Of a DNA stretch of 64,000 nucleotides, positions 39,598-61,090 are shown piece by piece (position 1 is the stretch's first letter; each line of letters opens with the position of its first letter). The position numbers were made by a program, and so were the translations under genes. Under the pieces are notes generated by a model that saw only the letters and a list, made by a program, of their open reading frames with translations, ran no database searches and was not told the DNA's origin. Where the stretch lies: positions 248,001 through 312,000 of the IMG/VR virus record IMGVR_UViG_3300017963_000188. The stretch is one strand, 5' to 3'.

Positions 39598-39609
39598 TGA
39601 GGTATTTCG

Positions 39610-42600: not shown

Positions 42601-43773
42601 GACACTGGAGGACCTACTAATGTAGGTAGATTCCGAATTAAAGGTATACATCAAAAAGATTTTGGAGTGACTGGGCCTTTCACTGGTGATTTACCTACAG
42701 ATCATGAAGGTGACACTATATCTGGTGAGGGTGGATCAGTAGGGGGTGGTGTAGTTGTTTTGGTGAAAATACCTGGTGTGACAGGTTGGTTGGATCTAGG
42801 TCGTAGTAATGGTGATCCTAACATTGATAAGACAAAAGATTACTATGGATGTCTGGTTCAGTCTAACCAAATTGAGAATCTGGTAGATGGTCTTACAGAT
42901 TCAAATGCCATAGCTCTTGATATAAATGCTAGTAAGATGTATTGGACTGACACAGTAACTTCAAAAATACAACGATCTGACCTTGATGGATCGAATGTTG
43001 AAGATATTTACACAGCATCAGATGCTTGGGGTATTGCTCTGGATACTAATGCTGATAAAATGTACTTCACTAGTCCAGGCGCAAATAAGATTAGAAAAGC
43101 AGACCTAGATGGTAGTAATGTAGAAGATTTAGTAGATACTGGGTCAGGATTGCCTACAAGTATTGCTTTGGATATCAATGCTGGTAAAATGTATTGGATC
43201 AGTTTTGGACCTCCAAATCATATCTATCGAGCAAATTTAGATGGCTCAATGGTAGAAACTCTTGTATCAAATATTGGTGCTAATCCTTATGGTATAGCAT
43301 TAGATGTGGATGCTGGATATATGTATTGGTCTGATACAGCAGAGAGTTATATTAGACGAGCTGATTTGGATGGTTCTTTTGTAGATATCGTGGTGGAAGA
43401 TGCTTTGAGTCCAAATGGAATAGCTCTTGATCTAGAAGAAGGGAAGATTTATTGGCAAGGTCTGAGTCAAATCAATAGATGTGACCTTGATGGTTCTAAT
43501 AGGGAAGATTCTATAACACCCAGAGGATTGACTAAAGGGAAAGGTTTGGCTTTGGATACGGATTCTCGTAAGATATACTGGACCAATTATAATCACCATA
43601 AGATACAAAAGACAAGTATGGATGGTATGAGCATATATACTTACACTACAGATTATTACACTCAAGATAACGGTTTGGGAGAGTATCCCATTGCTATTAG
43701 GATAGGTTTAATAAAAGATGGTTATGGTTACTGGAATGACGTGGTAACTATCGAATGGCTACCGTATACATAA
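39610..43773 (+). CDS. Virion appendage protein, family B paralog 2, with two YWTD beta-propellers
   Basis: 1387 aa. Collinear full-length paralog of the previous gene (MPTKVDPGTLAIG start, EWLP end). Twelve YWTD-type repeats (about 41530-42300 and 42871-43626). Confidence 0.8.
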   Translation: MPTKVDPGTLAIGSGKAAQDSISVSSLDFAHLIDFQAALSAHVNDPDGAHPASAISVQDVYAKYDGVNAEIVFDEISDLVPDYPNAIGESRSVPNSGVPDWGVLDTYSKTGGFTCDTANHGHTSWGGGNQGGTPGDWIAETHCLIPDTVTGCVITGTLYPADRGYLVLLYATKGVFDNSGDTIEVGKLNLASNFDELRRRNPAVGYQQLDYTASENHWDPGTDIFSLTYRLPMLKEYDAGVPYTTYDFNYLQFQLARYTATLDLTATPFDIGTDVDFGSLKLFHFKSYTNVAGANYSASNLYGSHGKLDIYSDTSPAAPTLNEAGGEVLINAAYPLGTETTSVVANADLTTPNNLAAGTAIFAGDSTDRGKILTITGSSQGNNGTYQVLNEVDASNVKVYPNFPGTLPDTVTPQVQIEGANVVRLSGIAHYGPDNGFYVDQTFITTPDFWNNSYLTSDVADPKVSSEYLSDKSPLSYDFSDFGVVVKDIPYHLDLSSVSLSKGDGPAIDTSASHRATFISQESLVVRKGGSSYLSRVSHIVRSPFTTMQDYSSNPVGILLVDVYGQEISSKMKEEFYTEQYRYDLGTDLLEFIKYPIIPYDRSAPNFGDDGVVSGSNTFTSATASFTSADTGRIINIAKRPKLYWTDRQDDQIQRSNLDGAFVETVYSWGQNPNGIALDTVNGKIYWADFNYQEVKRMNFDGSGFETVWSGQQVYKIALDVDAGKIYYSDRGDHWIKRANMSDGSSKESLINYDDVDCVFLDIDAGKIYYTTGSPGLNTISRANMSDGSSIEVLYTVTSPEWIPDFAFDLIHGYIYFTVIGPSGRIMRCDLDGSNDVTITPSVMAYNIEIDVDGGKLYWSDVTSNVIKWSDLDGSNIESIISVTSGSESVRDMALMLESSFESYTATYVNGTEISVSPDWPSVDGVMREWRFPVQFDSDADLSTFTQKELQVASGQLVVPENDYTAGWALPSAGQFDYSGLAGGDPADTIRWYTRLFDTGGPTNVGRFRIKGIHQKDFGVTGPFTGDLPTDHEGDTISGEGGSVGGGVVVLVKIPGVTGWLDLGRSNGDPNIDKTKDYYGCLVQSNQIENLVDGLTDSNAIALDINASKMYWTDTVTSKIQRSDLDGSNVEDIYTASDAWGIALDTNADKMYFTSPGANKIRKADLDGSNVEDLVDTGSGLPTSIALDINAGKMYWISFGPPNHIYRANLDGSMVETLVSNIGANPYGIALDVDAGYMYWSDTAESYIRRADLDGSFVDIVVEDALSPNGIALDLEEGKIYWQGLSQINRCDLDGSNREDSITPRGLTKGKGLALDTDSRKIYWTNYNHHKIQKTSMDGMSIYTYTTDYYTQDNGLGEYPIAIRIGLIKDGYGYWNDVVTIEWLPYT

Positions 43774-43785
43774 GGATGTTTAGGC

Positions 43786-46700
43786 ATGGCAACATTCAAC
43801 GACCATTTCAAAGATCTCTTAAATCTTGTTGCCAAGAGAGTTTTGGGTCGGGAGCACACTTCTGATATTCCTATTGACTTGGAAGGAGCCTATCGTCCCT
43901 ACAATCAAATAACTCCATTTGATAAGATTGAAGATACAGGTCTTAGTGAATTTAAGTATACTTCTGGTATCAGGAAGTCAAACGCTACTCAGCCAGAAGT
44001 TAATCTTTTCAGTTTTTCTGATAATATTTCTGATAATGCTCAAGGACGTATTGCTACTATTTACGGTATTAAAGAAGTAAGCTATTCAGATACTGATGGT
44101 AGTGACGTTGGGTATGTAGCTGATAACTACAGATTCATTCACAGGACGTTTGATTTCCCTGACCAGGGGGTCAGTGCTGGGGATGTTATGTTTGTGCCTC
44201 TGACAGGTAGATTCTACGTCTCAGATGCAGTTATTACAGGAGATCCACCTAATACTGGACTTCAATTTCCTGTAGATACTTTTTCAGAGCCTACATTCAC
44301 ATTTGGTTCAGATATTGATGTTCTGATTCTTCAGAGAAATGCTGTTCAACTTTTCACTGTATCTGGACCCAATGTAGAAGTAGGTCGAGAACAAACCTTT
44401 TTTATGGTTACTCCTGATGTGGTTCAAAACCCAAGTCCTTATCTTGCTGACTTAAATTTGCTATCTCCAAAACGTCTACGTCCCTTGATGCCTCATAGGA
44501 AGAGTACCAAGATTGATTCAATCTTCACAAAAGGAGTGTTGGGTCTCAAATCAGATTGGGATTTTATGCTGGTTCTTTATCCAGATGATGGTGCTGGAAA
44601 TCCAGATTACACAAAACCAATCATAGGACCGAGACCTATAATCGATAGCTCTATCTCTGATGAACAGGAAATGATTATTGACCATATGAATGGTTCTGTT
44701 CATTTTACAGTGCCTCCACGTCCAGGAGATGAAATCAATCCAAATGCTGTGACCGGAGCACCCCTGAAACTGTGGGCTATCTTTGCTACCATAACAATGG
44801 GCACTAGTGTATCTCAGACAAATTCAAATAGTCTTGTTCGAGGTGTCAGTGATTTCAACCCAGTATTGGTTGATGATAAAACAAGCACCCCTTCATATTT
44901 CAGATATGACCAGAATAGAAAGATTTGGTCGTTATTTTCAGGAGAAAAATATCTAGAAACAGATCCAGCAAATCAACCAGCTCAAGGGTTTGAGGTTGGT
45001 GAGCTAGGAGTAGAGAAAACCAACAGAGCAGGTTTCAGATTAAATCCAGAGAATGAAACTTGGGAAGTGTGTTCTATCCCTTCTGATTCTGATTTCATAC
45101 CGTTACGACTCACTTCAGGAGAAGTTGGGGGTACTCATCCTGGTATCAGTGTGGACGCTCCAGGATATACAGGTGGTTTCTTTTATAACAGTGGTGAAGA
45201 TAGATGGGGTTTGGATAAAGACCTATACATGGTTACTGCTGTTGAGGAATTAGGTTCTGATTCTTTACCTAATAGTTCGAATGTGAAAGTGGCTGTGTCT
45301 GGTAATTTTGCATATATTATCAGGAATGTGTCTGGTGATGGGTTCCTTTATGTATATGATATATCAGATCCTAATGCTATTGTTATGAGAGATTCTGAAG
45401 TTGTTGCAGGTCGTGAATTTCTAGACATAGATATATCTGGAACCAATGTTTTTGTCCTTATAACAAATGAAATTCAAGTCTACAATGTTTCAAATCCAGA
45501 TAGTATCTCATTGACAGATGGGTACCCTGCTGGTTCAGATGTGTATTTCCAAAGATTAAAAGTAATTGGTGATTATGTTTATGTTGTTGTACTATCATAC
45601 TTTACAGAATTATTCAATTGGGGATCTAGTCTATGGGTTCTTGATTTTAATGTGACAACGGCAGATGAACTCACTTATAGAGATGATGCTAATGTTCTTG
45701 GTCCACATGATCCACCTGGTCCTGGTTATGTGTCAGTGACAACAACTGATGTTTCTATAATAGCTACTATGATGTATAAAGAAGTTTTGTATACAATTGA
45801 TGTCACAGATCCAGATTCTGTATCTGTTCTTGATAGCGTTGTTGTTACAGATGGAACAGAAGTTGATGTTGAAAGAGACATAGTTGCAGTGTTATGTCCT
45901 GATGAATCTATAGATACTTTGAGGTTGTTTGATATTTCCAATCCGTCTTCCATACAAGTTAGAGATACTACAACATCTGGTTTGGATTCACCTGTTGATG
46001 TGATTGTTTCTCGTGGATATGTTTGGGTAGCTAATAGTGGTGATATGACACTTCTCAAATTTAGTGCTGTGAATCCTCTTAATATTGTGTTAGATAATTC
46101 ATATATCCAAACAGGTAATGGATTACTAGATCTAGATCTTAATAATAGTAAATTAGCTGTGTTAACAAGTAGTCCAACTACTGATATTCTGAAAATTTAT
46201 AATGAAATAAATACACAAGTACAGTTCCATCAAATAATATCTTCTTCAATTGATACTGATTATCTTGATTCTGAAACGGCAGTCATTGAAGATTTGACTG
46301 CAACAATAGTCAGGACAAATACTATTGATGGTGGCAGTTCTTTATTGTCTGTAGATGCTAATACTGAAATAACAGGTTCACTAATAACTAATGGTGTGAC
46401 CAATTCTGGTATTGTGCGGAGTTCTGATTCTAATATACCAATCCAAGGAAGTGCTACTGGGTCATATTCATCTAGTCAGATAGTAGGTTCTCAGCTCGCT
46501 CCTTGGGGTGTTGATATCGATTACACTACTGGTAAAGTCTATTGGGCCAGTTATGGTAGATCTTCTGGGCAAGATATCATTCAAAGAGCTAATCTAGATG
46601 GGACGAATGTTGAAACAATAATTGGTGGCTTGCAGCAACCATATGCTTTAGAGTTAGATGTTCCTGGAGGAAAAGTCTATTGGTCTGATATGTTTACCAA

Positions 46701-47415
46701 TGGTATTCATAGAGCTGATCTTGATGGGTCAAATACTGAACAAATAATAACAGGACAAGATGAACCTCGTGATATAGCTCTTGATTTAGTTGGGGGAAAG
46801 GTGTATTGGACAGAATCTGCTGGGAATGTAGTGAGAAGAGCTAATCTTAATGGTTCTTCTGTTGAAACTCTTGTCTCAGGTCTTTCGCAACCACAAGGGA
46901 TAGCGGTAGATCCAGCAAATGGTAAGATGTATTATTCTGATGAAACTCTTGCAAAGATAGTGCAGGCCAATTTGGATGGTTCTTCACCTGTAGATATTTT
47001 AACAACTATAGATGCTCGTAATCTTGTTGTTAGGCATAATAAATTATTTATTTCGGAGTATGTTTCTGATCGTATTAGAATGTCTAATTTAGATGGTTCT
47101 AATCTTGTATATATTAAATCAGGTGTGAATCTGACTCCATGTGGTATTGGTGTGAGAGACCATTTATTGGTTTGGACATCAACATATAATGATAATGTAA
47201 GTAAAATACCATTAGTTGTGTCAGGTATTTTAGGTGAGGCAGAAGATGGTTATGGTGGATACTTTTTTGGGACAAGTACCAGAGCACCTATCCATGTTGA
47301 AGGTATGAGTGCTTTACCATCAAGTGCAATGCAAGGTGATATTGCAGTTAGAGATAGTGATAACACCGTACATATATACCTGAATAGTGCTTGGAGACAG
47401 TTCACTGTCACATAG
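43786..47415 (+). CDS. Tail fibre-like protein, family C paralog 1, with LVIVD-like and YWTD propellers
   Basis: 1209 aa. N-terminal ~480 aa shared with the next two ORFs. LVIVD-like repeats (VAVSGNFAYI, LYVYDISDP, LRLFDISNP) at about 45230-46205. Six YWTD-type repeats at about 46480-47215. Confidence 0.75.
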   Translation: MATFNDHFKDLLNLVAKRVLGREHTSDIPIDLEGAYRPYNQITPFDKIEDTGLSEFKYTSGIRKSNATQPEVNLFSFSDNISDNAQGRIATIYGIKEVSYSDTDGSDVGYVADNYRFIHRTFDFPDQGVSAGDVMFVPLTGRFYVSDAVITGDPPNTGLQFPVDTFSEPTFTFGSDIDVLILQRNAVQLFTVSGPNVEVGREQTFFMVTPDVVQNPSPYLADLNLLSPKRLRPLMPHRKSTKIDSIFTKGVLGLKSDWDFMLVLYPDDGAGNPDYTKPIIGPRPIIDSSISDEQEMIIDHMNGSVHFTVPPRPGDEINPNAVTGAPLKLWAIFATITMGTSVSQTNSNSLVRGVSDFNPVLVDDKTSTPSYFRYDQNRKIWSLFSGEKYLETDPANQPAQGFEVGELGVEKTNRAGFRLNPENETWEVCSIPSDSDFIPLRLTSGEVGGTHPGISVDAPGYTGGFFYNSGEDRWGLDKDLYMVTAVEELGSDSLPNSSNVKVAVSGNFAYIIRNVSGDGFLYVYDISDPNAIVMRDSEVVAGREFLDIDISGTNVFVLITNEIQVYNVSNPDSISLTDGYPAGSDVYFQRLKVIGDYVYVVVLSYFTELFNWGSSLWVLDFNVTTADELTYRDDANVLGPHDPPGPGYVSVTTTDVSIIATMMYKEVLYTIDVTDPDSVSVLDSVVVTDGTEVDVERDIVAVLCPDESIDTLRLFDISNPSSIQVRDTTTSGLDSPVDVIVSRGYVWVANSGDMTLLKFSAVNPLNIVLDNSYIQTGNGLLDLDLNNSKLAVLTSSPTTDILKIYNEINTQVQFHQIISSSIDTDYLDSETAVIEDLTATIVRTNTIDGGSSLLSVDANTEITGSLITNGVTNSGIVRSSDSNIPIQGSATGSYSSSQIVGSQLAPWGVDIDYTTGKVYWASYGRSSGQDIIQRANLDGTNVETIIGGLQQPYALELDVPGGKVYWSDMFTNGIHRADLDGSNTEQIITGQDEPRDIALDLVGGKVYWTESAGNVVRRANLNGSSVETLVSGLSQPQGIAVDPANGKMYYSDETLAKIVQANLDGSSPVDILTTIDARNLVVRHNKLFISEYVSDRIRMSNLDGSNLVYIKSGVNLTPCGIGVRDHLLVWTSTYNDNVSKIPLVVSGILGEAEDGYGGYFFGTSTRAPIHVEGMSALPSSAMQGDIAVRDSDNTVHIYLNSAWRQFTVT

Positions 47416-47425
47416 GAATAGATTT

Positions 47426-50400
47426 ATGGTAGATTTCAATGAACATCTTAAAGATCTGTTAGACCTAACCTCAAAGAAGGTTTTGGGTCGTGAGCATACT
47501 TCAGGAGATCTTTCTCCTGAACTTGAACAGATCCGTCGCCCATATAATCAAATCACACCATATGATTATGTTAAAAATACAGGTCTTGAGAACCTTAGCT
47601 ACACAAGAGGTATTAGGAAACCATCTGGTCAAAATCCACAAAAGAATTTGTTTAACTTTTTGAAAAACTCCGGTTCAGATGCCATTGGTCGAATTGCTAC
47701 CATAGTTGGGATAGAAGAACTAGGTTCTTCAGATGTGGATGGAGCTAGCAAAGCTCAATTCTTGAGTGGTCCTGATAGATTGGTGCATGACACTGCAAGT
47801 TATTTCTCAAACCAAGGAGTGACGGCAGGAGACTATTGTTACTTCCCATGGAATAGGAAGTTTTATCGTATCTTCAGTGTGGCTGCCGATACAATTCAGT
47901 TTGATGGTACTCCTCTTAGTGATAGTGGGTTTGTTGCTTCTACATATTATGATGCCCTGATCCTTACATTACAGCCTGAAAAATTATATACGGTTCCTGG
48001 CATCCTTGGACAAGAACAGACATACTTCATGATGAGACCTGATAGTCCTCCAATCATTAATTCAGGAGATTATGCTTCAGATCCTCACGAGTTGGAAGAA
48101 TATCGGTTACGACCATTGATGCCATATCGAAAGCCTGTTCGAATTGATGCTATCTTCAATGAGGCTTTAGGAAGTGAAGATTTAAAAGAGAATTGGGATT
48201 TCCAGATTGTACTATTTCCCGATGATGGATCAGGTTCTCCTGATCTTACAAAGCCTATTGTAGAGGGTCCTGTTGTTATAGACAGTGAGAAATCACTAGA
48301 TGAACAGGCTATGATTGTGGATCATGCTAATGGTTCTGTTCGGTTTACAGTACCCCCTCAACCTGGAGATGCTATAAATCCAACTTCTATCACTGGTCAA
48401 TCTTTGAAGCTTTGGGCTGTATATGCTGTTATCACACCAGATCCAACTCATTTTTCAAATGGTGATGTGTCTGGATATAGTAATATAGCAAGAGGTCTGA
48501 CAGATTATCCTGCAATTGATGTTGAGTCAGGTCTATATGATTACCCTTCATATTTTCAATATGATCGTAATCGTAAAATCTGGTCACTATTTTCTGGATC
48601 TAAATATCTAGACCCAAATTCTGAGGACCAACCAGTCCAAGGTTTTGAGATTGGTGAAATGGGTAGGGGAAAAGATAATAGTCCTGGATTCAAGTTAGAC
48701 CATGTGAATGGTAGGTGGGAAGTTAGATCAAAAGCATTAGATGCTTCTGAGGACATTACTCTATTTCTAAGTTCTGGTGAAGATGGTGTATCACAACTTG
48801 GGATTGGTGCTCTTCAAAATGGATCAAAGTTAAGTGACTTTGGATATGATGAGTCTGATGATAGATGGTCTTTAACAAGTAATTTGAGATTGAAAAAATC
48901 TCTTGATGCATTCACTCTACAGACATTGGGATCAGATAATTTGGATACATTTGCTGATCCTGATATGATTCGTATTTATAACAGTAATTGCATTTTAGCA
49001 TTGAGAAACAAAGGTACTTATACAGCAGAAATTGGTTTGTTTCATGCCGCAGACCTTGATACAAATTCAGTGACTCTTAAGGATACCATTACAGTTCCGA
49101 ATGCAGTGAGTTTTGTATTTGCGAATTGGAATGGTTATAGACTGTATGTTGCTTTAAGCAATGGTGATATTGCTAGATATAATATTCTTCCAACTATATA
49201 TGATGCTGGAGCTACGTTTAGTTATGTTACCACATATACAACAATACCTTATGGATATACAGTTGTTGAGGTGAAAGATATTCAGTATGAAGGGACACCT
49301 AGACCTCCAAGTGATCCAGATCCTTTTGGAGAATCATTTCATAGAGTATTGGTTTCTGTTATTATAGATGATGCAGGGGATCATAAACTTACTTTTGGTG
49401 GTGTTGAGCTTCAAGTTGGTGGTGGTGATTACATACCAACCACTGTTTTCCGTACCTTTGGTGCTGTCCTAACTTCAGATACTGATCCAGTTGGACAATA
49501 TATATTTGTAGATGGGCTTTCAAATGATTATTCACATGAAGACAATGACCATATCTATGCTATAACAAATAATGGTGTTGATTGGTATACATCCACAGAT
49601 TTCCCTGATTCTACAGATTTTATTGTTGGGTATCGTGATTTTGAATCTATATCAAATGTAATAGCTCAATGCTATTATGACCGAGTTTTGTATGTAGTTT
49701 CATCTACAGCATTACGTGTCGTTGATGTTCCTGATGATGAGACATACACTTTTATAACCAGGGGATCAACTACAGATGGTATTGAGACTCCAATAGATAT
49801 TACTATTGATGGGCCAAATTCTATTGTTTACATTTTGAATTCAGATTCAACAGTGTCTATCTATGATGTGTCAGATCCTGATACACCTACATTCCTTAGG
49901 ACTCGTCCAGTTAATTTCTCCTCAACTCCACGTCAGATAGAGTTCTTTGATTACACTGGTAATGCTTTAGCATTAGAGCAAGGTGATGATAATGGTGGTG
50001 TGGTTTCTTTGATTGGTGATGAGACGTATCTATCAACTATCGATAATTTACGTTCCAGCTCTATAAATACAGATGTTATAAGTACAGACTTATTAGAGTC
50101 AAATGACCCTACTGATATTTTGAAATTGAATGTAGCAAAAATTATGTCAGGGGAGTTTGTAACTATCGGAGATGGTACCAATACATTTGGGCATTACAAT
50201 GGTACTGATGAAACTCCATTTTCAGATGCTGTGACAAAACTCCCAAATGGTGGGACTATATTTGTTTTTCCTGGGACATATACTTTTGGTAGTAATGTCA
50301 ATTTACCCAATGGTGTAAATTTGATTGGATCTGATCCAAACAATTGTGTTATAGAAATTGGTTATAATGGTTCTTGTTTCACAGGGCTAGGTGACCAATC

Positions 50401-52294
50401 ATTTAAAAATCTAACCTTCGATTTGAATTATGCATTGACTTCTATAGTTTCAATTTTACAATGTTCTGGAGACACTATAATAGAAAACTGTGTTTTCAAA
50501 ACAACTGTAACTTCCATCACTGGGGCTTGTCGTCATGTGGAATTTTCTAGTGTTTGGAACATAGTTATTCGAGATTGTAAGTTTATTGATTCTTCAAGTT
50601 ATGTCAGAGATATTTATGTGTATTATTGCAATAATGTCATGATTGATAATTGCACTTTTGCATATAGTACAGGTAATCCAAGTCAACAGGGGATTTATTT
50701 AGAAAACTCTAATAATGTTGATGTTCGTAATTGTTACATTGATGCAGAGTATGCTAGTGGTGGTGACTGGATATTCATTTATAATTGTACTATGGTTAAT
50801 GTGCTGCACAACCATGCTCATACAGATTTCAGTGACTGTTTTGTTGAATTAGCTGGTACTTGTAGTGATGTGAATATAATTGGTAATAGATGTCAATATA
50901 CAGCATCTTCTACGGCTATCAATACATTGTTCTCACAGGCTAATTTGACCAGAGTAAACATTAGTGACAATTCTTTTGTGACTATTACATTCTGGGGTGG
51001 TACTCTTTCTAAAGTACACATTAAAAGTAATGATTTAAGAGGTTTGTATGACACCTCCAATATTTATGTCAGTGCTTCTGTAACTTCAGCACAAGAGGTT
51101 TTTATTCTAGATAATGACATATATAGTGCTCAGGATGGGAGTTTTGGTGCTCTCTCTCTTCGTGGTACAGGGGTCAGAGACAAGTTCTTCATAGTAGGTA
51201 ACCGTGTGCAGACTACACATTATTATGCTCATGGTATAGAAATAGGGTATGATTTTGATAATACTGTGATTCGAGGAAATGATATACGATTTGTTATTTC
51301 AAATACGAGTTCTTTTGGTGGTTCCGGTATTTATATTAAACCTGAGAGTTCATCAGCTACTACAACTATGATTATTGAAAACAATGTAGTTGCTGGTAAT
51401 TATCGATACGGTATGTTTTTGAGTAGTCTTAGATATGGTTCTGTTAAAGATAATGAGGTGTCTGGTTGGAAAGAGAAAGGTATATACTGGGAAAATTCTA
51501 GTGCTGAGGGTTTTGTGATCGGTAACAATGTGCATAGTAATGTGGGTTCAGTAACATCCGGTGACTTAGTGGCAGGATTAGATATTTTGTATCAAGAAAG
51601 AATGATAGTTTCTGATAACCAAGTACATAATTTATCTCATATTGGTGGTGGTGGAAGTCTATATGGTATTCGAGCATATTTTACAGAATTTACATGTGAA
51701 GTGAAAAGGAACCGTCTTTATGATTTTACTATGAGTGGTACTGGTGAAACTAGATGTATTGATGTTGATAGTGGGGTGGTAAGTTCTAATCATGTTTCAA
51801 AAATAACATCCACGGGTGGGGGGTCTGTTTATGGGTTGAATGTTTTTCCCACAGGGGATACTACACATATTACTGATAATTTCATATCCCAATTATCTAC
51901 AGCAAGTGATGGGTATGGTATCACTATTGGTATCAGTTTTGGTTCTGTAGGTATGATTGTTTCTGGTAATAAGGTGCAAATTACAGAAACAGGGAGTGGT
52001 ACAGCTCGTGGTATAGCTATATCATTTTTAGCTTCTACTACACTTTTAGCTATAACCAATAATGTATGTAGTGCTGGTCCTACTGGAAGAGCATTGGAAT
52101 TTTTTGGCACTTTAACCAATATTTCAGATTCTATTTGCAATAGTAACATTTTCAATGGTTCTACTTCAGTGTATAAAGGCACAGGAGTTGTAGATATGTT
52201 GTTTATTGGTAATTGGGCTCAAACTATATCTGGTGGTGGATCATTTGCAGACTTTGCCGCTGGTGATGGTGGTCACTACCATAGGGAATCATAG
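47426..52294 (+). CDS. Tail fibre/tailspike-like protein, family C paralog 2, with propeller and pectin-lyase-like right-handed beta-helix
   Basis: Likely start ATG 47426 (MVDFNEHLKDLL, matching the paralog's MATFNDHFKDLL). Propeller-like region at about 48910-50020 (VSIYDVSDPDTPTF). GGTIFVFPGTYTF...LPNGVNLIGS followed by Asn-ladder repeats (I.NN.I, VSDNQVHN) at about 50200-52200. Confidence 0.75.
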   Translation: MVDFNEHLKDLLDLTSKKVLGREHTSGDLSPELEQIRRPYNQITPYDYVKNTGLENLSYTRGIRKPSGQNPQKNLFNFLKNSGSDAIGRIATIVGIEELGSSDVDGASKAQFLSGPDRLVHDTASYFSNQGVTAGDYCYFPWNRKFYRIFSVAADTIQFDGTPLSDSGFVASTYYDALILTLQPEKLYTVPGILGQEQTYFMMRPDSPPIINSGDYASDPHELEEYRLRPLMPYRKPVRIDAIFNEALGSEDLKENWDFQIVLFPDDGSGSPDLTKPIVEGPVVIDSEKSLDEQAMIVDHANGSVRFTVPPQPGDAINPTSITGQSLKLWAVYAVITPDPTHFSNGDVSGYSNIARGLTDYPAIDVESGLYDYPSYFQYDRNRKIWSLFSGSKYLDPNSEDQPVQGFEIGEMGRGKDNSPGFKLDHVNGRWEVRSKALDASEDITLFLSSGEDGVSQLGIGALQNGSKLSDFGYDESDDRWSLTSNLRLKKSLDAFTLQTLGSDNLDTFADPDMIRIYNSNCILALRNKGTYTAEIGLFHAADLDTNSVTLKDTITVPNAVSFVFANWNGYRLYVALSNGDIARYNILPTIYDAGATFSYVTTYTTIPYGYTVVEVKDIQYEGTPRPPSDPDPFGESFHRVLVSVIIDDAGDHKLTFGGVELQVGGGDYIPTTVFRTFGAVLTSDTDPVGQYIFVDGLSNDYSHEDNDHIYAITNNGVDWYTSTDFPDSTDFIVGYRDFESISNVIAQCYYDRVLYVVSSTALRVVDVPDDETYTFITRGSTTDGIETPIDITIDGPNSIVYILNSDSTVSIYDVSDPDTPTFLRTRPVNFSSTPRQIEFFDYTGNALALEQGDDNGGVVSLIGDETYLSTIDNLRSSSINTDVISTDLLESNDPTDILKLNVAKIMSGEFVTIGDGTNTFGHYNGTDETPFSDAVTKLPNGGTIFVFPGTYTFGSNVNLPNGVNLIGSDPNNCVIEIGYNGSCFTGLGDQSFKNLTFDLNYALTSIVSILQCSGDTIIENCVFKTTVTSITGACRHVEFSSVWNIVIRDCKFIDSSSYVRDIYVYYCNNVMIDNCTFAYSTGNPSQQGIYLENSNNVDVRNCYIDAEYASGGDWIFIYNCTMVNVLHNHAHTDFSDCFVELAGTCSDVNIIGNRCQYTASSTAINTLFSQANLTRVNISDNSFVTITFWGGTLSKVHIKSNDLRGLYDTSNIYVSASVTSAQEVFILDNDIYSAQDGSFGALSLRGTGVRDKFFIVGNRVQTTHYYAHGIEIGYDFDNTVIRGNDIRFVISNTSSFGGSGIYIKPESSSATTTMIIENNVVAGNYRYGMFLSSLRYGSVKDNEVSGWKEKGIYWENSSAEGFVIGNNVHSNVGSVTSGDLVAGLDILYQERMIVSDNQVHNLSHIGGGGSLYGIRAYFTEFTCEVKRNRLYDFTMSGTGETRCIDVDSGVVSSNHVSKITSTGGGSVYGLNVFPTGDTTHITDNFISQLSTASDGYGITIGISFGSVGMIVSGNKVQITETGSGTARGIAISFLASTTLLAITNNVCSAGPTGRALEFFGTLTNISDSICNSNIFNGSTSVYKGTGVVDMLFIGNWAQTISGGGSFADFAAGDGGHYHRES

Positions 52295-52303
52295 AGGATT
52301 GTC

Positions 52304-54400
52304 ATGGAATCATATTATCAGAATTTACTCTTGAAGGCTCTTAAAGCTACTCAGGGAAAGATTCAAATATCTAGTGGAGCTTTGATAGGTCAAGAAGGTC
52401 TTACGATTCCTGTGAGCCAATCTGTGCCTTTTGGGAATGAGTTTGGACATGCCTTAACGGATCTCGAAGTTCAAGCTACGTTCAGAAAACCATGTAGTAC
52501 ACAAGCTCTCAAAAATCTGTTTACTACCTTTGAGGGAGAGTCTTCATATGGTTATAAAGGTCGGTTAGGAACTTACTATGGTATCCAGGAATTGTCTTAT
52601 TCAGATCGTGATACAGCCGATTATGCTACGATTACAGCTACCAATCAGTTGACTCATCAGACCTTTAGTTGGGGTGATGATGTTACTGCTGGTGATATGC
52701 TTATTGTTTCTGATCTCAATCCCGTATCAGGTACAAAAACTGGTGTGAGACGTATTTCTGGAGGTGCTGCAACTGTTATCAGCACATATTCAGGACTTGG
52801 AGTCTCCACTAATCAAGTAGATGCTTCTGTACTTAGACTTAAGCCAGTGCAACTTTTCACAGTACCTAGTCCAAATGGAGCAGGCACTGAACAGTTGTTT
52901 TTGACTGTTGATCCTAATAGTGATGCTGTGTCCAACCCTGAATATTTATCCAATTTGGGGCTGGTCAATGAACATCGTGTCTATCCTTTAATACCACCTA
53001 GAACTGGGGAAGAACGGGCTGATGGTATTTTCTATAGGATTTCGGATTTAAAAGGTATGGGGGAGAATGACCTCAGGGCTGATGAGTGGGGTTTTAGGAT
53101 AATTCTGTATCCTTCCAATAGTGGTGGGACCAGTCCAGATCTCACAAAACCAATTGCTTCTCTTAATCCTGTTATAGATAGCACTAAACCATCTGATGAG
53201 CAAGATATGCTCATTGATTATGCTACTGGTTCGGTGTATTTCACTACCCCACCTCGACCTGGAGATGCTATCAACCCAAATAGCTATACAGATGGTCCTA
53301 TCAAGTTATGGGCTGTATTTGCTGCATTTAGTCTTGAATCAGAAACAGGGGATTCTACGGTTCATAATACAGCTCGTATGATTATGGATCTACCATCTGG
53401 TGCTGATGCTGTATATGACCATCCTTCGTTCTTGAAATATAACAAGACCAAAAAGTTGTGGGGATTCTATTCAGGAAAAGGGGCTTTGAAAACAGCAGCA
53501 GGAGACCAACCTGTCCAGGGGTTCGAGTTTGGGGATGATGTTGCTACTGAAGAAACAGTTCGTATGATATTGGACCAAGTAAATGGTAGGTGGGAAATTT
53601 GTTCAGTTCCTACAACATCAGCAAATTATCAAGGTCTGTTCCTTTATTCAGGTGTTAATGGTGGTCAAAACCCTGGTTTAGGTTTCAATATTGGTGGTAC
53701 AGAATATGGCCTACGGATTGATAATTCTACTTTGGGTTGGACTTTTGATGGGGCAAGTTTTGTCTTCAATCAAGGTGCTTCTGGTAACATTGCCATTTCA
53801 ATAAAGGGTGATGGTATAGCTCATGGTATGACTGGGCATGTGCCAACTGATGTGTTTGGGATCATTACTCGACAGCATTCAACAGAAGGTGGGTTGATGG
53901 TAGCAGCATGGTCCAGTGGCACACGATCATTGGAGTTAACTGGTTCTTCTACCACTGCTGATACATCAACATCAATTTCAGCAGCAGCTCCAATCCAACT
54001 TTCAGGCCAAAAAAGAGACACTACTACTATCCAAGCATTAGCAGACACTGAAAATGTAGTGGTAATGCAGAATTTCTTCTCTTCCAAATGGATTCTAAAA
54101 GGCAATGGAGATCAATATATTACTGGGGCTTATGCTAATTACGATTCTGAATCAGATGCTTTAGCCTGTCAAGATCTTGCTTATGAATTGTCTGGCTTGA
54201 CAGATAAGGTGATTCAATATAATCGTAAGAAGTTGGAGAAAATCGGTGTGATGAAAAATGGTTTCATTCACCTTAACAATATGCTAGGATTGCAACTTGG
54301 AGCTATTGGTGAAGTATTCCAGATAGTTGAGATTTTATGTGACAAAATGGGTCTAAGTTATGAAGAACTACGACAAATGATTCGTGGTCAGGAGATGTGA
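52304..54400 (+). CDS. Tail fibre-like protein, family C paralog 3 (no propeller insert)
   Basis: 698 aa. PDLTKPI...DEQDMLIDYATGSVYFTTPPRPGDAINP...KLWAVFA and QPVQGFE are shared with the two preceding ORFs. Helical C-terminus, possibly chaperone-like. Confidence 0.7.
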   Translation: MESYYQNLLLKALKATQGKIQISSGALIGQEGLTIPVSQSVPFGNEFGHALTDLEVQATFRKPCSTQALKNLFTTFEGESSYGYKGRLGTYYGIQELSYSDRDTADYATITATNQLTHQTFSWGDDVTAGDMLIVSDLNPVSGTKTGVRRISGGAATVISTYSGLGVSTNQVDASVLRLKPVQLFTVPSPNGAGTEQLFLTVDPNSDAVSNPEYLSNLGLVNEHRVYPLIPPRTGEERADGIFYRISDLKGMGENDLRADEWGFRIILYPSNSGGTSPDLTKPIASLNPVIDSTKPSDEQDMLIDYATGSVYFTTPPRPGDAINPNSYTDGPIKLWAVFAAFSLESETGDSTVHNTARMIMDLPSGADAVYDHPSFLKYNKTKKLWGFYSGKGALKTAAGDQPVQGFEFGDDVATEETVRMILDQVNGRWEICSVPTTSANYQGLFLYSGVNGGQNPGLGFNIGGTEYGLRIDNSTLGWTFDGASFVFNQGASGNIAISIKGDGIAHGMTGHVPTDVFGIITRQHSTEGGLMVAAWSSGTRSLELTGSSTTADTSTSISAAAPIQLSGQKRDTTTIQALADTENVVVMQNFFSSKWILKGNGDQYITGAYANYDSESDALACQDLAYELSGLTDKVIQYNRKKLEKIGVMKNGFIHLNNMLGLQLGAIGEVFQIVEILCDKMGLSYEELRQMIRGQEM

Positions 54401-54693
54401 TGGGAATTTCTAGAGTTCTAGATTTTACTAGTCAGGAAGCAGGAGAATTTTTAGAGAATTTACTTGAAGGACCTGCACCGGATAATTTTTCAGAGGTAGA
54501 AATTGATGCTCTAAACAGCATCAAACAGGTTCGAGTCAAGTCTGACAAGATAAAACAGAGTATATTACAACACAAAAAAGAGATTGGAAATCTAGAAAAA
54601 GAGATCCAATTTCTCGAAGGTCAGTTCAATGCCTACTTTAATCTATTAGTATCTGCTGAGAATAGGCGTAGAAATGAAATAACGGAGAGCTAA
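54397..54693 (+). CDS. Small coiled-coil protein (possible fibre assembly chaperone)
   Basis: 98 aa heptad-like sequence, coupled to the preceding fibre gene by a 4-nt overlap. Function inferred from position. Confidence 0.5.
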   Translation: MMGISRVLDFTSQEAGEFLENLLEGPAPDNFSEVEIDALNSIKQVRVKSDKIKQSILQHKKEIGNLEKEIQFLEGQFNAYFNLLVSAENRRRNEITES

Positions 54694-54694
54694 G

Positions 54695-55366
54695 ATGCGA
54701 TTTGTTGTGGATAGATTTGATAAGAGAATAAAGGGAGCATATCCTGAGGTGGATTTCCCTATCAATGGGAATTTCATCGTCAAGATACCTTCTACAGTAA
54801 GTGTTGACATTGAGCCAGATATGGACCTCGATGATCTTCAAGATAAGAAATCAATCGGAATCTTAGCTTACTACCCCAGTTTTTCTGATATCATTTTTGA
54901 GGATTTCCTTAACAGTTCTGGTGTTGAAGTACCTGGAAGTCCAGACCCAACTGTGTTATTTGCTGGTATAGGAGACACCTCTCCTGTAGGTTTTTCCCCT
55001 CATTCCAATATTCTACTACCTTATGATGGGACCAATTATGGTCTCCTCACTTCTACTGGTGTAGATATGGGTGGTATGCCAGCCAATAATGATGTGATTG
55101 TGATTTGGGAATGCTTTGAAATCACCAGTGCTGAATCAGATGTTGATGGGGTGTCTACAATATTTTTCAATGAGTTAGATCCTGATGTTGTGAAATGTGA
55201 ACTCTCATTTGATGATAACGTAACTCCTAGTTGGGAACAGGTATATCATAATTCTTTTCATCAGATGACTCCTACAGGTCAGTGGGCTCGTATTAGGTTC
55301 ACAAATAATCTTACATACTCAGACAAAAAAGTATGGCTAGGATCATACTCTATTTTGCATAATTAA
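54695..55366 (+). CDS. Hypothetical virion protein
   Basis: 223 aa, acidic and beta-rich, within the structural operon. Confidence 0.55.
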   Translation: MRFVVDRFDKRIKGAYPEVDFPINGNFIVKIPSTVSVDIEPDMDLDDLQDKKSIGILAYYPSFSDIIFEDFLNSSGVEVPGSPDPTVLFAGIGDTSPVGFSPHSNILLPYDGTNYGLLTSTGVDMGGMPANNDVIVIWECFEITSAESDVDGVSTIFFNELDPDVVKCELSFDDNVTPSWEQVYHNSFHQMTPTGQWARIRFTNNLTYSDKKVWLGSYSILHN

Positions 55367-55379
55367 GAGGTGAATAGCT

Positions 55380-58300
55380 ATGTCAGAAAATTTTGGAAGT
55401 GGTGTTTCTAGGACCCTTGAAGCTAAAGATCGTCAGTATAGTACCGTTGTGTGGCAGAAAGGAAAGCCACCTCTCGATAGTGAGTTGAATCTGATTAGCC
55501 AGATCATCCAAGAGACATATGATAAGCTCTCTGAGGCTTCAACTCCATCTGGATGGGTTGGAGATCCTATTCGTATCACAGAAGACTTTATCACTAATTC
55601 TTCATGGTCAAACCGATTCAGATTTGGTACTCAGAGAAACAGTGAAAAGAGAGGTTTTCCAATCGCTGTGGTGAATGGTTGGGTAGTCCCTGTTGTAGCT
55701 ACCAGGGTAGGTGACCCACCGACTTCTCCAAATGATACTGATTTCTTCAATCAAATTGATCTTGATCCACCTCCCAGTGGTGTAGGTGACTTCAGAACTG
55801 ATTTTGTTTTCTTGGAGGTTTGGAGAGCACAGTTGAGTCCTGGAGGGACAACTTCCAAACCTACAGCAACTGAAATATACAAGTTTGGTAACACTGAACA
55901 TGGTGGGACAAACCTATCAGATGACATTCAAGACCCAGCAATTGGTTTTGAGACCACAGAACGAGTCCAGGTTCAATATCGTATACGAGTTGTTTCTGGT
56001 GTGAGTCTTTCAGGTCATAATGATGGGTTTGATGATTCTGCTGTGTTTGCTCGTGGGGCATCTAGCACCAACACAGCTTTCACTTTTGAAAATATGCGTG
56101 AAGAACTTGGTGATCCAGGTTTGTGGAGAGCAGGGGATGGTGATTACACCAACTCATTAGGTGCTGTAGATGGATATAGTTTTGCTATTCCTATTTGCAG
56201 TGTTTTCAGACGTAACTCTCAAGCATATGCTGCTGATTCAAATCAGAATGGTGGGGTTAATAGAAATCTTGCTGCTACAACAAGGGATGATGCTACTGAA
56301 TTCATCAACACACCTACTCTAGATACAGCAATTGATGATGATGATGTGAGTTTGGATCTTGTGACTATCACCAGCACTGGTTTGCCAAATGTGCAAAGTG
56401 TGATTCGTATTGATGATGAAATCCTTACCTATGCTGGTATCACAAGTAATACCCTGACTGGTCTTGTGAGAGAGGCTTACAACTCTGCACCGCAGGAACA
56501 TAAAGCAGGGGCTACAGTCACATTGCTCCCAATGCGTCCTGATGGTTTGTTTTCAGATCAGGTGGCCAATAAGGACATTTTTGATCTGAGACATGTTGTG
56601 TCTCTTGAGTCAATGGACTTTCAACGTTTGTTATCTCACAATTTCACCAAGCTGTTAAGAGGTGAGTTGAAATCTACTTGGAAGAGATCCGGTGCTTCTG
56701 GTATTCGAGGTCCTGAGATTCTTTTCGTAGATAGATTAACTTCTACCTCCCCACCAGCAGGTGTCTCTGAACTAGATGATACAGATAATCATCGTATTAT
56801 CTTTTCTGATGCAGCTTTGATGCAACCTGGGAATATTTGCATGGTAGCACCCCCTGCCACAGATGGTAGTGAGCAATCAGCTACTTTAGCAGGTTTTGGT
56901 CTAGAGGTTACAGCTACTGCTCAGGTTGCTACAGCTAGTACCTGGACTGCGGGAGATTGGATCAGAATCCCTATATCTCAGTTCAAAAATGGGTTCCAGG
57001 GTGGGCATGATGACAGTGTTCGATTCCTTGCTGATTCTGAATTAGAGACTACTGTTAGAATCTACATTGATGGGGCAGAGACTGAATACACAGCAAATGG
57101 TGGTGGTAATGATTACTTCACTGCTGAAGCTTACACTGGTGGTGGTGTGCCTGATCCTGATGATGATTTAAAGATTACCTTTGGGGGTGATTGGCCTACT
57201 ACCGCAGATACTAATCTGATCATTTCATTTGTGCTTCAATATGGTCCAGGAAGAGGGTTGAGTAGGACTCCTAATTTCATGCACGAGATTAACTTCTCAA
57301 CCTCTACTACTGATATTCTGACTAGATACTTCAACAAATTGCATATGGAACCTATCCATCTTTGGGGTCGTATCAATCCTGAGGGGTATAGAGAAGAGCC
57401 AGTTAAGAACAGTGAAGCCTATATTGACCTTGGTTCTAAGACAGCAATCATTAGTCCTTGGCGTAGGTTGGGAGTACCTGACATCAAGGTTATTGACGGT
57501 TCTGGTTTCAACGGTGGTAGTGGTCTTATGCCTGTAGGGGCAGCTCCTAAGGATGAGGTAGATCCATTGGATCTGTTCAAGGGTAGTGATAATGGTGCTA
57601 CTCAGCATTGTGTGAGTTTCCCTCATGATTGGATCTGTTTCCCTCGGACAGGAGATGTGTATGTACCCATTCTTCATGAGACAGTAGGCAACTTCTATCG
57701 AGGTATCAACTTCTTCATGTCATGTTCTGAAGGTGCTCATGCTACGTTAGACGACAGTGAAAAGAATTATGTCAACACCTCATATGCTGACTCACAGCAG
57801 TTCTTCAGCACCTCAACTGATGGTTCTACCCCAGCAGCTTACAACCGTAAGATCACAACAGGTACTGGTGAAATTGCTGCCCATAGTGTAGCTGGGATGA
57901 GAAAATATAGTAGTGGAGATAGAGAAGGTTTAGAACTTCCACCATTCTATGGTGTAGCTCGTCTATTTGCTGTGTATGAAGGGGTTGATTTTGAAGCTAA
58001 TGGTTCTGCATTTGATACCACGACAAGAGCACCTCTTGCTGGTGGTGCTGTAAATCTTCTCCGACCAGAGTTTGATGGACCACCTATTTTCATCATAGAA
58101 GATGATGATGGGGATTGCACCTTTGTATTGAATGCAGAAGCCATTGACTTGAATCAGCTTGCTTCACCACCAGCATCTTTTGCTGATGGTGAGTATGTAC
58201 TTGAAGCTTCTGTGTTTGGTTTTGACCGTGGGTTCTTGACCGACAATTGTCGGTTGGTGCTCAGTCGAAGTGTGGCTCATGTGGTAGGGGACGATATTGA

Positions 58301-61076: not shown

Positions 61077-61090
61077 AGACAGGATTGGAT

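What the first reader, a model, noticed from the sequence alone, without database searches (positions are those of the whole stretch)
43786..54400. Three tandem fibre paralogs share one ~480 aa base and carry different heads
Seen: ORFs 43786, 47426 and 52304 share a long N-terminal scaffold (GRI/LxTxxGIxE; PDxTKPI...DEQxMxxDxxxGSVxFTxPPxPGDxINP...KLWA; QPxQGFE; RWE/TWE). After it, ORF 43786 carries an LVIVD-like propeller plus a YWTD propeller. ORF 47426 carries a divergent propeller at the same junction (after DRWG/DRWS) plus a long beta-helix. ORF 52304 has neither and ends in a helical tail. Inference: a combinatorial fibre set with a common attachment base and three binding or degradative specificities, possibly for host-range breadth.
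Basis: partly seen in the sequence, partly recalled or inferred. Interest (0 to 1): 0.68.

Follow-up and report, generated by a model that had tools for sequence, protein, structure and literature searches.

The report
Three tail-fibre paralogs, different heads
A 358-kb uncultured marine phage has three adjacent genes at the end of its tail and baseplate gene block that share a ~470-residue front part and carry unrelated end parts, which is most likely a set of receptor-binding tail proteins of a familiar modular kind built on an unnamed anchor domain.

Summary
ORFs 43786-47415 (1209 aa), 47426-52294 (1622 aa) and 52304-54400 (698 aa) share an N-terminal base of about 470 residues (35-42% identity, E 1e-64 to 1e-120). 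The window is part of a 358,038-bp virus record, and these are the only three copies in it.

- Gene 1 has seven LVIVD-like repeats plus a YWTD propeller.
- Gene 2 has a divergent LVIVD-like region plus a right-handed beta-helix.
- Gene 3 does not simply lack a head. Its last ~210 residues are a separate module. That module also ends unrelated proteins in at least 19 other viral contigs, including a collagen-repeat tail fibre and a tail-spike-like protein.

The genes lie at the far end of a ~60-kb contractile-tail and baseplate block. Related phages keep the gene order but carry one, two or three family members with different heads. The ~700-aa member is the constant one. The base has no Pfam, PHROG or NCBIfam match and no convincing solved-structure match, apart from a small beta-barrel that is common in phage tail proteins.

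My reading is baseplate-attached receptor-binding proteins with a shared anchor. Virion location, trimer state, specificities and any effect on host range are not shown. Mechanistically this is a new member of a known kind.

The parts
43786..47415 (+). Family A paralog 1 (1209 aa): base, LVIVD-like propeller, YWTD propeller, and a 50-aa C-terminal motif
   Evidence: ORF. Paralogy. Domains.
43786..45210 (+). Shared base of paralog 1 (residues 1 to about 475)
   Evidence: Alignment A1. Against the ortholog P0004, identity is 60-85% up to residue ~340 and 40-60% up to ~455, then drops to 15-30% after ~475.
45280..46218 (+). Seven LVIVD-like repeats (residues 499-811), a presumed beta-propeller
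   Evidence: Pfam PF08309 at E 5e-5, 23 bits against a cut-off of 20.2. Repeat alignment.
46486..47208 (+). YWTD (LDL-receptor class B) six-bladed propeller (residues about 901-1141)
   Evidence: PF00058 at E 5e-18. PDB sequence hits to LDLR and LRP at E 1e-21 to 1e-115. 126-nt blade periodicity in the DNA (repeat D2).
47257..47409 (+). C-terminal ~50-residue motif (AP..L...GDI.....VHIYL...W..FT), shared only with ortholog P0004
   Evidence: BLASTP 35% identity over 51 columns, E 3e-7. Found in only 2 of the 131 stored proteins.
47426..52294 (+). Family A paralog 2 (1622 aa): base, divergent LVIVD-like region, right-handed beta-helix
47426..48871 (+). Shared base of paralog 2 (residues 1-482)
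   Evidence: Alignment A1. Coordinate mapping.
48968..50035 (+). Divergent LVIVD-like repeat region (residues about 515-870); boundaries approximate
   Evidence: A profile of paralog 1's repeats scores it at 16.1 bits, against a maximum of 3.6 bits in shuffles. No Pfam hit.
50456..51547 (+). Right-handed parallel beta-helix. This is the stretch with profile support; the domain probably extends further on both sides.
   Evidence: PF13229 at E 1e-20 with 5 stretches, PF05048, TIGR03804.
52304..54400 (+). Family A paralog 3 (698 aa): base plus a conserved C-terminal fibre-end module. This is the member kept full-length in the close relatives that have more than one copy.
   Evidence: 39-61% full-length identity to the 669-701-aa orthologs.
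52586..52837 (+). Small beta-barrel inside the base (residues 95-178), of the E1-FCCH / phage-tail-protein type
   Evidence: AF2 model with pLDDT 84-92 in this stretch. VIA Z 6-7.9 over about 70 residues, to a tailspike depolymerase C-terminal part, lambda and Chi tail-tip proteins and the UBA1 FCCH domain.
53756..54385 (+). C-terminal module (residues 485-694): a beta-rich part followed by helices, with motifs KGNGD, DALACQD and LGAIGE
   Evidence: Alignment A6. Found at the C-terminus of unrelated proteins in at least 19 other viral contigs.
54397..54693 (+). 98-aa companion gene, overlapping the stop of paralog 3 by 4 nt; conserved in position in relatives
   Evidence: 37% identity to the 95-aa proteins of L005 and L015.
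54695..55366 (+). 223-aa companion gene, conserved next to the family across the whole clade (218-229 aa)
35455..43773 (+). Family B tandem pair (1380 and 1387 aa). They are 48% identical over their full length and carry two YWTD propellers each. This is a second paralog expansion directly upstream.
   Evidence: Relatives carry one copy with 0 or 1 propeller.
32879..35455 (+). Family C member (858 aa). It shares its first ~300 residues with the 1334-aa gene at 55380.
55380..59384 (+). Family C member (1334 aa), tail-fibre-like
   Evidence: PHROG tail and tail-fibre hits. tblastn hit to Tunturiibacter phage Tunturi_5 'tail fiber protein' gp247 and to Bacillus phage G gp420.

Best explanation
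The three genes are old tandem paralogs of a structural protein family (called family A here). The family belongs to a clade of uncultured huge contractile-tailed phages.

Each protein has two parts. The first is a conserved N-terminal base of about 470 residues: a lineage-specific N-terminal ~90 residues, a small beta-barrel, and a loop-rich core with invariant motifs. The second is a different distal module set.

I infer that the base docks each protein onto the periphery of the baseplate, or onto a neighbouring tail protein. I infer that the distal parts contact the host surface:
- LVIVD plus YWTD propellers (paralog 1), probably binding;
- an LVIVD-like region plus a beta-helix (paralog 2), tailspike-like and possibly a glycan depolymerase;
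- a fibre-end module (paralog 3) that is also used by collagen-like tail fibres elsewhere.

The short member is the constant component in the close relatives. The long members are the variable slot, filled by duplication and by replacement of the head at a junction near residue 460-475.

Shown: paralogy, domain content, position in the tail gene block, variation in copy number and heads among relatives, and the mobility of the modules. Inferred: virion location, the docking role of the base, trimeric state, receptor binding or degradation, and any effect on host range.
For: Paralogy and copy number:
- BLASTP between the three genes gives E 1e-64 to 1e-120. The alignment is A1.
- There are only three copies in the 358-kb genome.

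Position in a tail and baseplate block:
- The same strand carries a hub/lysozyme-like gene (7855), a gp25-like sheath initiator (19760) and a Baseplate_J gene (20836).
- Tail-fibre-like family C genes flank the set.
- The gaps between the genes are 9-12 nt, each with an AGGA-type site.

Comparison with relatives, which keep the gene order:
- L005/L015 have 876 aa + 679/669 aa.
- L007 has 1687 aa + 701 aa.
- L006, L017 and L018 have a single member of 1174-2460 aa.
- The heads of the long members show no, or only marginal, similarity between phages.
- The ~700-aa member is conserved over its full length (39-61% identity).
- L013 has a 691-aa short member preceded by a gene, cut at its 5' end by the contig, that ends like paralog 2's beta-helix head (24% identity over 793 columns).

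Junction:
- Paralog 1 is 60-85% identical to its ortholog P0004 up to residue ~340. Identity is 40-60% up to ~455 and 15-30% after ~475.

Tree:
- The long members form a clade with 100/100 support.
- P0001 groups with P0004 (100/99) to the exclusion of P0005. The paralog 1 / paralog 2 duplication is therefore older than the split from the L005 phage.

Family breadth:
- The profile search found 126 cluster representatives. Most carry the ~230-residue core at the N-terminus of proteins of 1100-2900 aa, on contigs of up to 620 kb.
- Their C-terminal parts mostly have no Pfam match.

Fibre context of paralog 3's end module:
- It is at or near the C-terminus of proteins that lack the base in at least 19 other IMG/VR contigs.
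- One carrier has 243 residues of collagen Gly-X-Y repeats and tail-fibre PHROG hits. Another hits a tail-spike PHROG.
- A collagen triple helix implies a trimeric fibre. That last point rests on established knowledge, not on a test here.
Against: - There is no direct evidence that any of the three proteins is in the virion. The phage is known only from metagenomes.
- The base has no match in Pfam, PHROGs or NCBIfam.
- The base has no PDB sequence match and no convincing structural match beyond the small barrel. The core at residues 176-480 reaches at best Z 4.7.
- Profile comparison with T4 gp7, gp9, gp10 and gp12 found nothing. The attachment role therefore rests on position and on analogy.
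- Globular propellers are unusual as the distal part of a trimeric fibre.
- The beta-helix head has no close homolog and no identified catalytic residues.
Confidence: 0.65

Rival explanations
1. The proteins are peripheral baseplate building blocks, comparable in role to the outer wedge proteins of T4, not receptor-binding fibres. The base is then a structural wedge domain. The distal modules would serve in envelope penetration or particle stability rather than host recognition.
For: - The genes lie directly downstream of baseplate genes.
- The small barrel of the base recurs three times in the 2115-aa protein at 10516. It also recurs in the 1446- and 1521-aa family C-like proteins and in an upstream 723-aa ORF of relatives. 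This suggests a general structural module.
- The homotrimer job gave no support, which is not evidence either way.
- The language-model feature search listed 'baseplate wedge initiator' clusters, but at a score of 0.81, which is chance level.
Against: - Core baseplate parts are normally conserved. Here copy number (1 to 3) and distal content change between close relatives, as is usual for host-recognition proteins.
- Paralog 3's end module is shared with collagen-type tail fibres and a tail-spike-like protein.
- There is no profile similarity to T4 gp7, gp9 or gp10.
Confidence: 0.2
2. The three paralogs co-assemble through their homologous bases into one hetero-oligomer, so that a single appendage carries three different heads. 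The alternative is three separate homo-oligomers.
For: - The bases are homologous over about 470 residues.
- The genes are adjacent and tightly spaced.
- No test here excludes it.
Against: - Relatives work with one or two family members, so a fixed three-part assembly cannot be the ancestral state.
- The bases are only 35-42% identical.
- Paralog 3's end module also follows collagen repeats in a single-gene fibre, which points to homotrimers.
- No complex test of the hetero-assembly was run.
Confidence: 0.08
3. The proteins are not part of the particle. They would be made during infection and act on the host surface or on neighbouring cells, for example as secreted binding proteins or polysaccharide-degrading enzymes, and merely lie inside the late gene block.
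For: - Propellers and beta-helices are also common in secreted bacterial proteins (the Pfam families).
- A NUDIX hydrolase gene at 31612 shows that non-structural genes can sit inside this block.
Against: - The family has a conserved syntenic position between tail-fibre-like genes across a whole phage clade.
- The N-terminal base is conserved and shows no obvious signal peptide in the printed sequences (read by eye, not tested with a predictor).
- One end module is shared with tail fibres.
Confidence: 0.05

Closest known systems
Branched multi-tailspike complex of Ackermannviridae phages (CBA120 TSP1-4; PMC8825819, PMC11414711)
   Same: Several adjacent genes for baseplate-attached host-recognition proteins. 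N-terminal parts serve assembly and anchoring. C-terminal heads are exchangeable, each with its own specificity, and beta-helix heads are among them.
   Different: The CBA120 anchors are T4 gp10-like XD domains plus a triple beta-helix. The base here has no profile similarity to T4 gp10, and no such structure appeared among the fold-search rows shown. In CBA120 only some of the TSPs share N-terminal domains and the complex is branched. Here all three share one long base, and nothing shows branching. The heads here include LVIVD and YWTD propellers.
Multivalent phages with many tail fibres or spikes: E. coli phage phi92, Klebsiella jumbo phage phiK64-1 (from my own knowledge, not checked here), and large vibrio Schizotequatroviruses with at least seven predicted fibres and recombination hotspots in the fibre genes (PMC12028318)
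   Same: Large-genome phages with several host-recognition proteins. Duplication and recombination in these genes are linked to host range.
   Different: In those phages the fibres were shown in particles, or receptors were identified. Here everything is inferred from sequence. The shared base is an unnamed family restricted, as far as these searches saw, to uncultured huge phages.
Podovirus tail fibres and spikes with a conserved N-terminal adaptor and swapped C-terminal parts (T7 gp17 type, SP6/K1-5 type; from my own knowledge)
   Same: A conserved N-terminal docking part joined at a sharp junction to replaceable distal parts. Orthologs show high identity before the junction and little or none after it.
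   Different: The anchor here is much larger (about 470 residues against about 150), the tail is contractile, and there are three tandem copies. The only link to Phage_T7_tail was a feature-search row at chance level (score 0.81).
Jumbo phage Tunturiibacter phage Tunturi_5 tail region (PP885688.1)
   Same: A cultured 309-kb phage whose annotated tail fibre gp247 matches the N-terminus of the window's family C genes. It is followed by two giant proteins annotated as RCC1-like ('regulator of chromosome condensation', a beta-propeller family by my own knowledge), next to baseplate genes. So propeller-bearing giant proteins near fibre genes are not unique to this window.
   Different: The profile scan of that 41-kb stretch found no family A base, and the propellers are of a different type.

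Membership tests
Modular phage receptor-binding protein set (shared N-terminal anchor, variable distal modules) | Genes lie in the tail or baseplate gene block | tested here: met
   Hub/lysozyme-like, gp25-like and Baseplate_J genes lie upstream on the same strand. Tail-fibre-like genes flank the set.
Modular phage receptor-binding protein set (shared N-terminal anchor, variable distal modules) | N-terminal part conserved, distal part unrelated, between paralogs and between orthologs | tested here: met
Modular phage receptor-binding protein set (shared N-terminal anchor, variable distal modules) | Homotrimeric assembly | tested here: inconclusive
   The complex job on residues 60-350 of paralog 3, in three copies, gave no verdict. 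There is only an indirect hint: the end module also follows a collagen triple-helix region in another phage.
Modular phage receptor-binding protein set (shared N-terminal anchor, variable distal modules) | Presence in the virion and binding to or degradation of a host surface structure | not testable with these tools
   The phage is uncultured and the host is unknown. The only runs found are DNA metagenomes.
T4 gp10 / Ackermannviridae XD-domain anchors | Sequence or fold similarity of the base to gp10 XD domains | tested here: not met
   hhalign of A2 against T4 gp10 gave probability 0.1%. No gp10 or TSP4-N chain appears among the rows shown for the fold searches. A weak relation cannot be excluded.
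LVIVD repeat beta-propeller (Pfam PF08309) | Profile match above the gathering score, with repeated units | tested here: met
   Paralog 1: 23 bits against a cut-off of 20.2, with seven repeats at residues 499-811. Paralog 2: no Pfam hit, only the custom repeat profile (16.1 bits against 3.6 or less in shuffles). For paralog 2 the label is 'LVIVD-like'. No structure was predicted for either region.
YWTD / LDL-receptor class B propeller (Pfam PF00058) | Profile match above the gathering score and similarity to solved propellers | tested here: met
   65.7 bits against a cut-off of 21. LDLR and LRP chains at E 1e-21 to 1e-115.
Tailspike-type polysaccharide depolymerase (right-handed beta-helix) | Right-handed parallel beta-helix | tested here: met
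   PF13229 at E 1e-20, PF05048, TIGR03804.
Tailspike-type polysaccharide depolymerase (right-handed beta-helix) | Catalytic residues, or similarity to a characterised enzyme | tested here: not met
   No PDB sequence match and no homolog in the large protein search. Activity remains open.
Peptidase S74 intramolecular chaperone (endosialidase / T5 pb1 type C-terminal domain) | Pfam PF13884 match and a conserved Ser-Lys dyad | tested here: not met
   No Pfam hit for residues 470-698 at E up to 1. The invariant columns of A6 contain no Ser or Lys.

The most novel reading that the evidence does not exclude
Family A's base is a previously undescribed anchor fold, specific to a clade of uncultured huge phages. 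It works as a universal socket for exchangeable heads. Beta-propellers of the LVIVD and YWTD types, otherwise known from cellular surface and receptor proteins, would then serve here as phage receptor-binding modules. With the duplicated family B pair upstream (four more YWTD propellers), this phage would carry an unusually propeller-rich, multivalent adsorption apparatus.
Probability: 0.35. Interest if true: 0.55.

Novelty: new member of a known kind. Interest (0 to 1): 0.42.

Why it matters
Huge phages from sediments and water are known almost only as sequences, and their host-recognition genes are mostly unannotated. This locus gives a recognisable handle: a conserved ~230-470-residue N-terminal signature found in 126 cluster representatives. 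The signature marks the variable, probably host-contacting tail proteins of one such clade.

The locus also shows duplication and head replacement at a defined junction. It identifies a second mobile element, the DALACQD/LGAIGE C-terminal module, which is shared among fibre-like proteins of many uncultured phages. Both could improve the annotation of receptor-binding proteins in metagenomic phages. They also suggest constructs for expression and binding studies. The general principle, modular receptor-binding proteins, is well established.

Tried and rejected
- **Homotrimer prediction.** Paralog 3 residues 60-350, three copies, with alignment A2: score 0.00, no verdict. This is not evidence either way.
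- **Fold searches, whole paralog 3 model.** PDB Foldseek found nothing at E <= 0.001. BFVD returned low-TM rows to assorted tail fibres. The ESM Atlas gave TM below 0.3 by the query. The wide VIA search matched only the small barrel at residues 95-178, and weakly residues 516-608 to trimeric spike beta-helices at Z about 5.8.
- **Fold searches, re-folded core (residues 176-480).** Best Z was 4.7.
- **Profile comparison with T4 gp7, gp9, gp10 and gp12.** Nothing.
- **Profile comparison between the three base families A, B and C.** Nothing.
- **GenBank phage collection.** No DNA or protein match for the base or for the C-terminal module.
- **Metagenome-contig scan.** It returned only the genome itself.
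- **Large protein search with the beta-helix head.** No relatives.
- **Large protein search with the C-terminal 139 residues of paralog 3.** Only P0003 itself and its ortholog P0007.
- **Profile of the C-terminal module against PDB sequences.** Only a non-significant hit to phage hyaluronidase HylP, E 0.76.
- **Reads.** Only Logan contigs of two metagenome runs, identical to the window apart from C>T at 44888. The second IMG/VR contig is identical apart from 2 mismatches in 21.5 kb. Contigs cannot show rare variants, so population-level head swaps remain untested.
- **Promoter and terminator scan.** At chance level.
- **Literature.** Searches for LVIVD or beta-propeller heads in phage fibres found nothing relevant.

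Full report
**Where the window lies**

The window is bases 248001-312000 of a 358,038-bp linear IMG/VR virus record, rated complete by CheckV. The record is metagenome contig Ga0180437_10000024. Near-identical DNA occurs in a second IMG/VR contig, with 2 mismatches in 21.5 kb. It also occurs in assembled contigs of one sediment and one seawater metagenome run.

Almost all long ORFs are on the + strand. The few family hits place the region in a contractile-tail and baseplate block:
- a hub/tail-lysozyme-like protein at 7855-9924;
- a gp25-like sheath initiator at 19760-20833;
- a Baseplate_J protein at 20836-24264.

A run of very large ORFs follows. The block ends before an SNF2 helicase at 61085.

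**The observation**

The three ORFs are real and the claim of a shared N-terminal scaffold is correct. BLASTP gives:

| Pair | Identity | Columns | E-value |
|---|---|---|---|
| gene 1 (43786) vs gene 2 (47426) | 42% | 597 | 1.8e-120 |
| gene 1 vs gene 3 (52304) | 35% | 496 | 2e-75 |
| gene 2 vs gene 3 | 36% | 477 | 4.5e-64 |

The genome holds exactly these three copies.

ATG 47426 is the likely start of the second gene. It has an AGGA-type site upstream and matches the public gene call of 1622 aa.

At the DNA level the copies are 63-72% identical in the best-conserved 138 nt. The longest exact shared stretch seen is 28 nt. These are old paralogs, not recent copies.

**The heads**

Gene 1:
- An LVIVD repeat hit above Pfam's cut-off. 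Seven such repeats can be read between residues 499 and 811.
- A YWTD propeller at residues about 901-1141.
- A 50-residue end motif shared only with its ortholog P0004.

Gene 2:
- No Pfam hit in residues 510-930.
- A profile made from gene 1's repeats scores that region at 16.1 bits. It scores the head of ortholog P0004 at 14.7 bits. The maximum in 120 shuffled controls is 3.6 bits. I did not fold either region.
- A right-handed beta-helix follows.

Gene 3:
The AF2 model does end in helices at residues 616-694. However, residues 485-694 form a module of their own.
- This module is the best-conserved part of the protein between orthologs: 57-72% identity against 30-58% in the base.
- The same module, with invariant motifs KG(N/D)GD, DALACQD and LGA(I/V)GE, closes proteins that lack the base in at least 19 other viral contigs. 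In most of them it sits at the very C-terminus.
- One carrier is a 776-aa protein with 243 residues of collagen repeats and many tail-fibre PHROG hits. Another is a 1498-aa protein that hits a tail-spike PHROG.
- The module is not an S74-type chaperone by Pfam or by conserved residues.

All three genes are therefore base-plus-module chimeras.

**Relatives**

The block is syntenic in several other metagenomic phages. In the table, A, B and C are the three base families of the block, defined under 'More than one expanding family' below.

| Source | Gene order (aa) |
|---|---|
| Window | C 858, B 1380, B 1387, A 1209, A 1622, A 698, then 98, 223, C 1334 |
| L005/L015 | C 860, B 1109, A 876, A 679/669, then 95, 223, C 1349 |
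| L007 | C 850, B 879, A 1687, A 701, then 80, 222, C 1343 |
| L006, L017, L018 (contigs of 244-620 kb) | one B, one A (1174-2460 aa), a ~220-aa gene, then one C |

Points that follow from this:
- The ~700-aa member is conserved over its full length (39-61% identity) and always comes last among the A genes.
- The long members' heads show no, or only marginal, similarity between phages.
- In a fifth relative (L013), the gene upstream of the short member is cut by the contig end. It ends like gene 2's beta-helix head (24% identity over 793 columns).
- Between gene 1 and its ortholog P0004, identity is 60-85% up to residue ~340 and 40-60% up to ~455. It drops to 15-30% beyond ~475.
- In a maximum-likelihood tree of the bases, the long members form a clade (100/100).
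- Gene 1 groups with P0004 to the exclusion of gene 2 (100/99). The gene 1 / gene 2 duplication therefore predates the split from the L005 phage, which then lacks a gene-2-type copy. The root is a midpoint root only.

**How wide the family is**

A profile search of 1.8 billion cluster representatives found 126 proteins. Seven besides the query proteins cover the whole base or nearly all of it. The others share a core of about 230 residues (profile positions about 110-350). In most of them the core sits at the N-terminus of proteins of 1100-2900 aa.

The ten I looked up are unnamed or 'hypothetical protein', on contigs of up to 620 kb. Of 27 members scanned, only two had any Pfam hit in the distal part: one BNR/sortilin propeller and one pectinesterase-like hit.

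No record in the GenBank phage collection has the base.

**What the base looks like**

The AF2 model of gene 3 is confident for residues 90-345 (pLDDT 80-93), moderate for 375-480, and poor for the first 90 residues.

Residues 95-178 form a small beta-barrel. It aligns at Z 6-7.9, over about 70 residues, with barrels in a phage tailspike depolymerase, lambda and Chi tail-tip proteins, T5 Dit and the FCCH domain of ubiquitin E1. The same barrel recurs three times in the 2115-aa protein at 10516. It also recurs in large proteins of relatives.

The rest of the core carries the invariant motifs. Re-folded alone (pLDDT 74.6), it has no match above Z 4.7. There is no profile similarity to T4 gp7, gp9, gp10 or gp12.

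I therefore cannot assign the base to any known anchor family. A weak or missing match does not prove that the fold is new.

**More than one expanding family**

The module contains three unrelated base families (hhalign probabilities below 1%):
- **Family A**, the subject of this finding.
- **Family B**, at 35455 and 39610. The two are 48% identical over their full length, and each carries two YWTD propellers. Relatives have one B gene with no propeller or one.
- **Family C**, at 32879 and 55380. They share the first ~300 residues. That part matches the annotated tail fibre gp247 of the cultured jumbo phage Tunturi_5 and gp420 of Bacillus phage G.

Gene 1's YWTD propeller is 35-41% identical to those of family B. 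So the same head type is used on two different bases within one genome.

**Interpretation**

The best-supported reading is that family A proteins are baseplate-attached host-recognition proteins. The conserved base is the docking part and the distal modules are the host-contacting parts. This phage lineage has widened its repertoire by duplication and head replacement.

This rests on five observations: position, synteny, the pattern of conservation, the nature of the heads, and the fibre context of gene 3's end module.

It matches the known principle of modular receptor-binding proteins. Examples are the branched tailspike complex of CBA120 (PMC8825819, PMC11414711) and the recombining fibre genes of large vibrio phages (PMC12028318).

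Not shown:
- presence in the virion;
- oligomeric state (the homotrimer job gave no verdict);
- the binding partner of the base;
- any binding or enzymatic activity;
- any effect on host range;
- any present-day swapping in the population.

The main rival is a structural peripheral-baseplate role without receptor function. A hetero-oligomer of the three paralogs and a non-virion role are less likely.

**Verdict**

Mechanistically this is a new member of a known kind. It is built on an unnamed anchor family of uncultured huge phages, with unusual propeller heads. Interest is moderate.

Noticed in passing
window 35455-43773: A second tandem paralog pair (1380 and 1387 aa, 48% identical over the full length), each with two YWTD propellers on its own ~640-residue base. 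Relatives have a single copy with no propeller or one. The same expansion process acts directly upstream of the finding.
   Followed up: partly
window 32879-35455 and 55380-59384: These two genes bracket the paralog sets and share their first ~300 residues (39% identity). That part matches the annotated tail fibre gp247 of Tunturiibacter phage Tunturi_5 and gp420 of Bacillus phage G.
   Followed up: partly
window 53756-54385; also L024, L025, L026 and L029-L047: A ~210-residue C-terminal module with invariant motifs KGNGD, DALACQD and LGAIGE ends unrelated fibre-like or spike-like proteins in at least 19 other IMG/VR contigs. It has no Pfam or PHROG name and no match in GenBank phages. Its role (trimerisation, folding aid or receptor tip) is unknown.
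   Followed up: partly
window 10516-16863 (protein residues 1644-1972): The small beta-barrel of the family A base recurs three times in this 2115-aa protein. A related ~45-77-residue segment is shared by the proteins at 25075, 35455 and 39610.
   Followed up: partly
window 31612-32169: A NUDIX hydrolase gene (Pfam E 3.6e-9) sits inside the tail and baseplate gene block, between structural-looking genes.
   Followed up: no
window 54397-55366: The 98-aa and 223-aa genes follow the last family A gene in the close relatives, and the ~220-aa one across the whole clade. They could be assembly factors or connectors for the neighbouring fibres. Neither has a family hit.
   Followed up: no
window 48356-48383 and about 53252-53279: A 28-nt exact identity between paralogs 2 and 3 at the PGDAINP motif. 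It is the longest exact stretch seen between the copies and is short for homologous recombination.
   Followed up: no
window 44888: The contigs of both public runs read T where the window has C. This is the only difference in the 6 kb examined.
   Followed up: no
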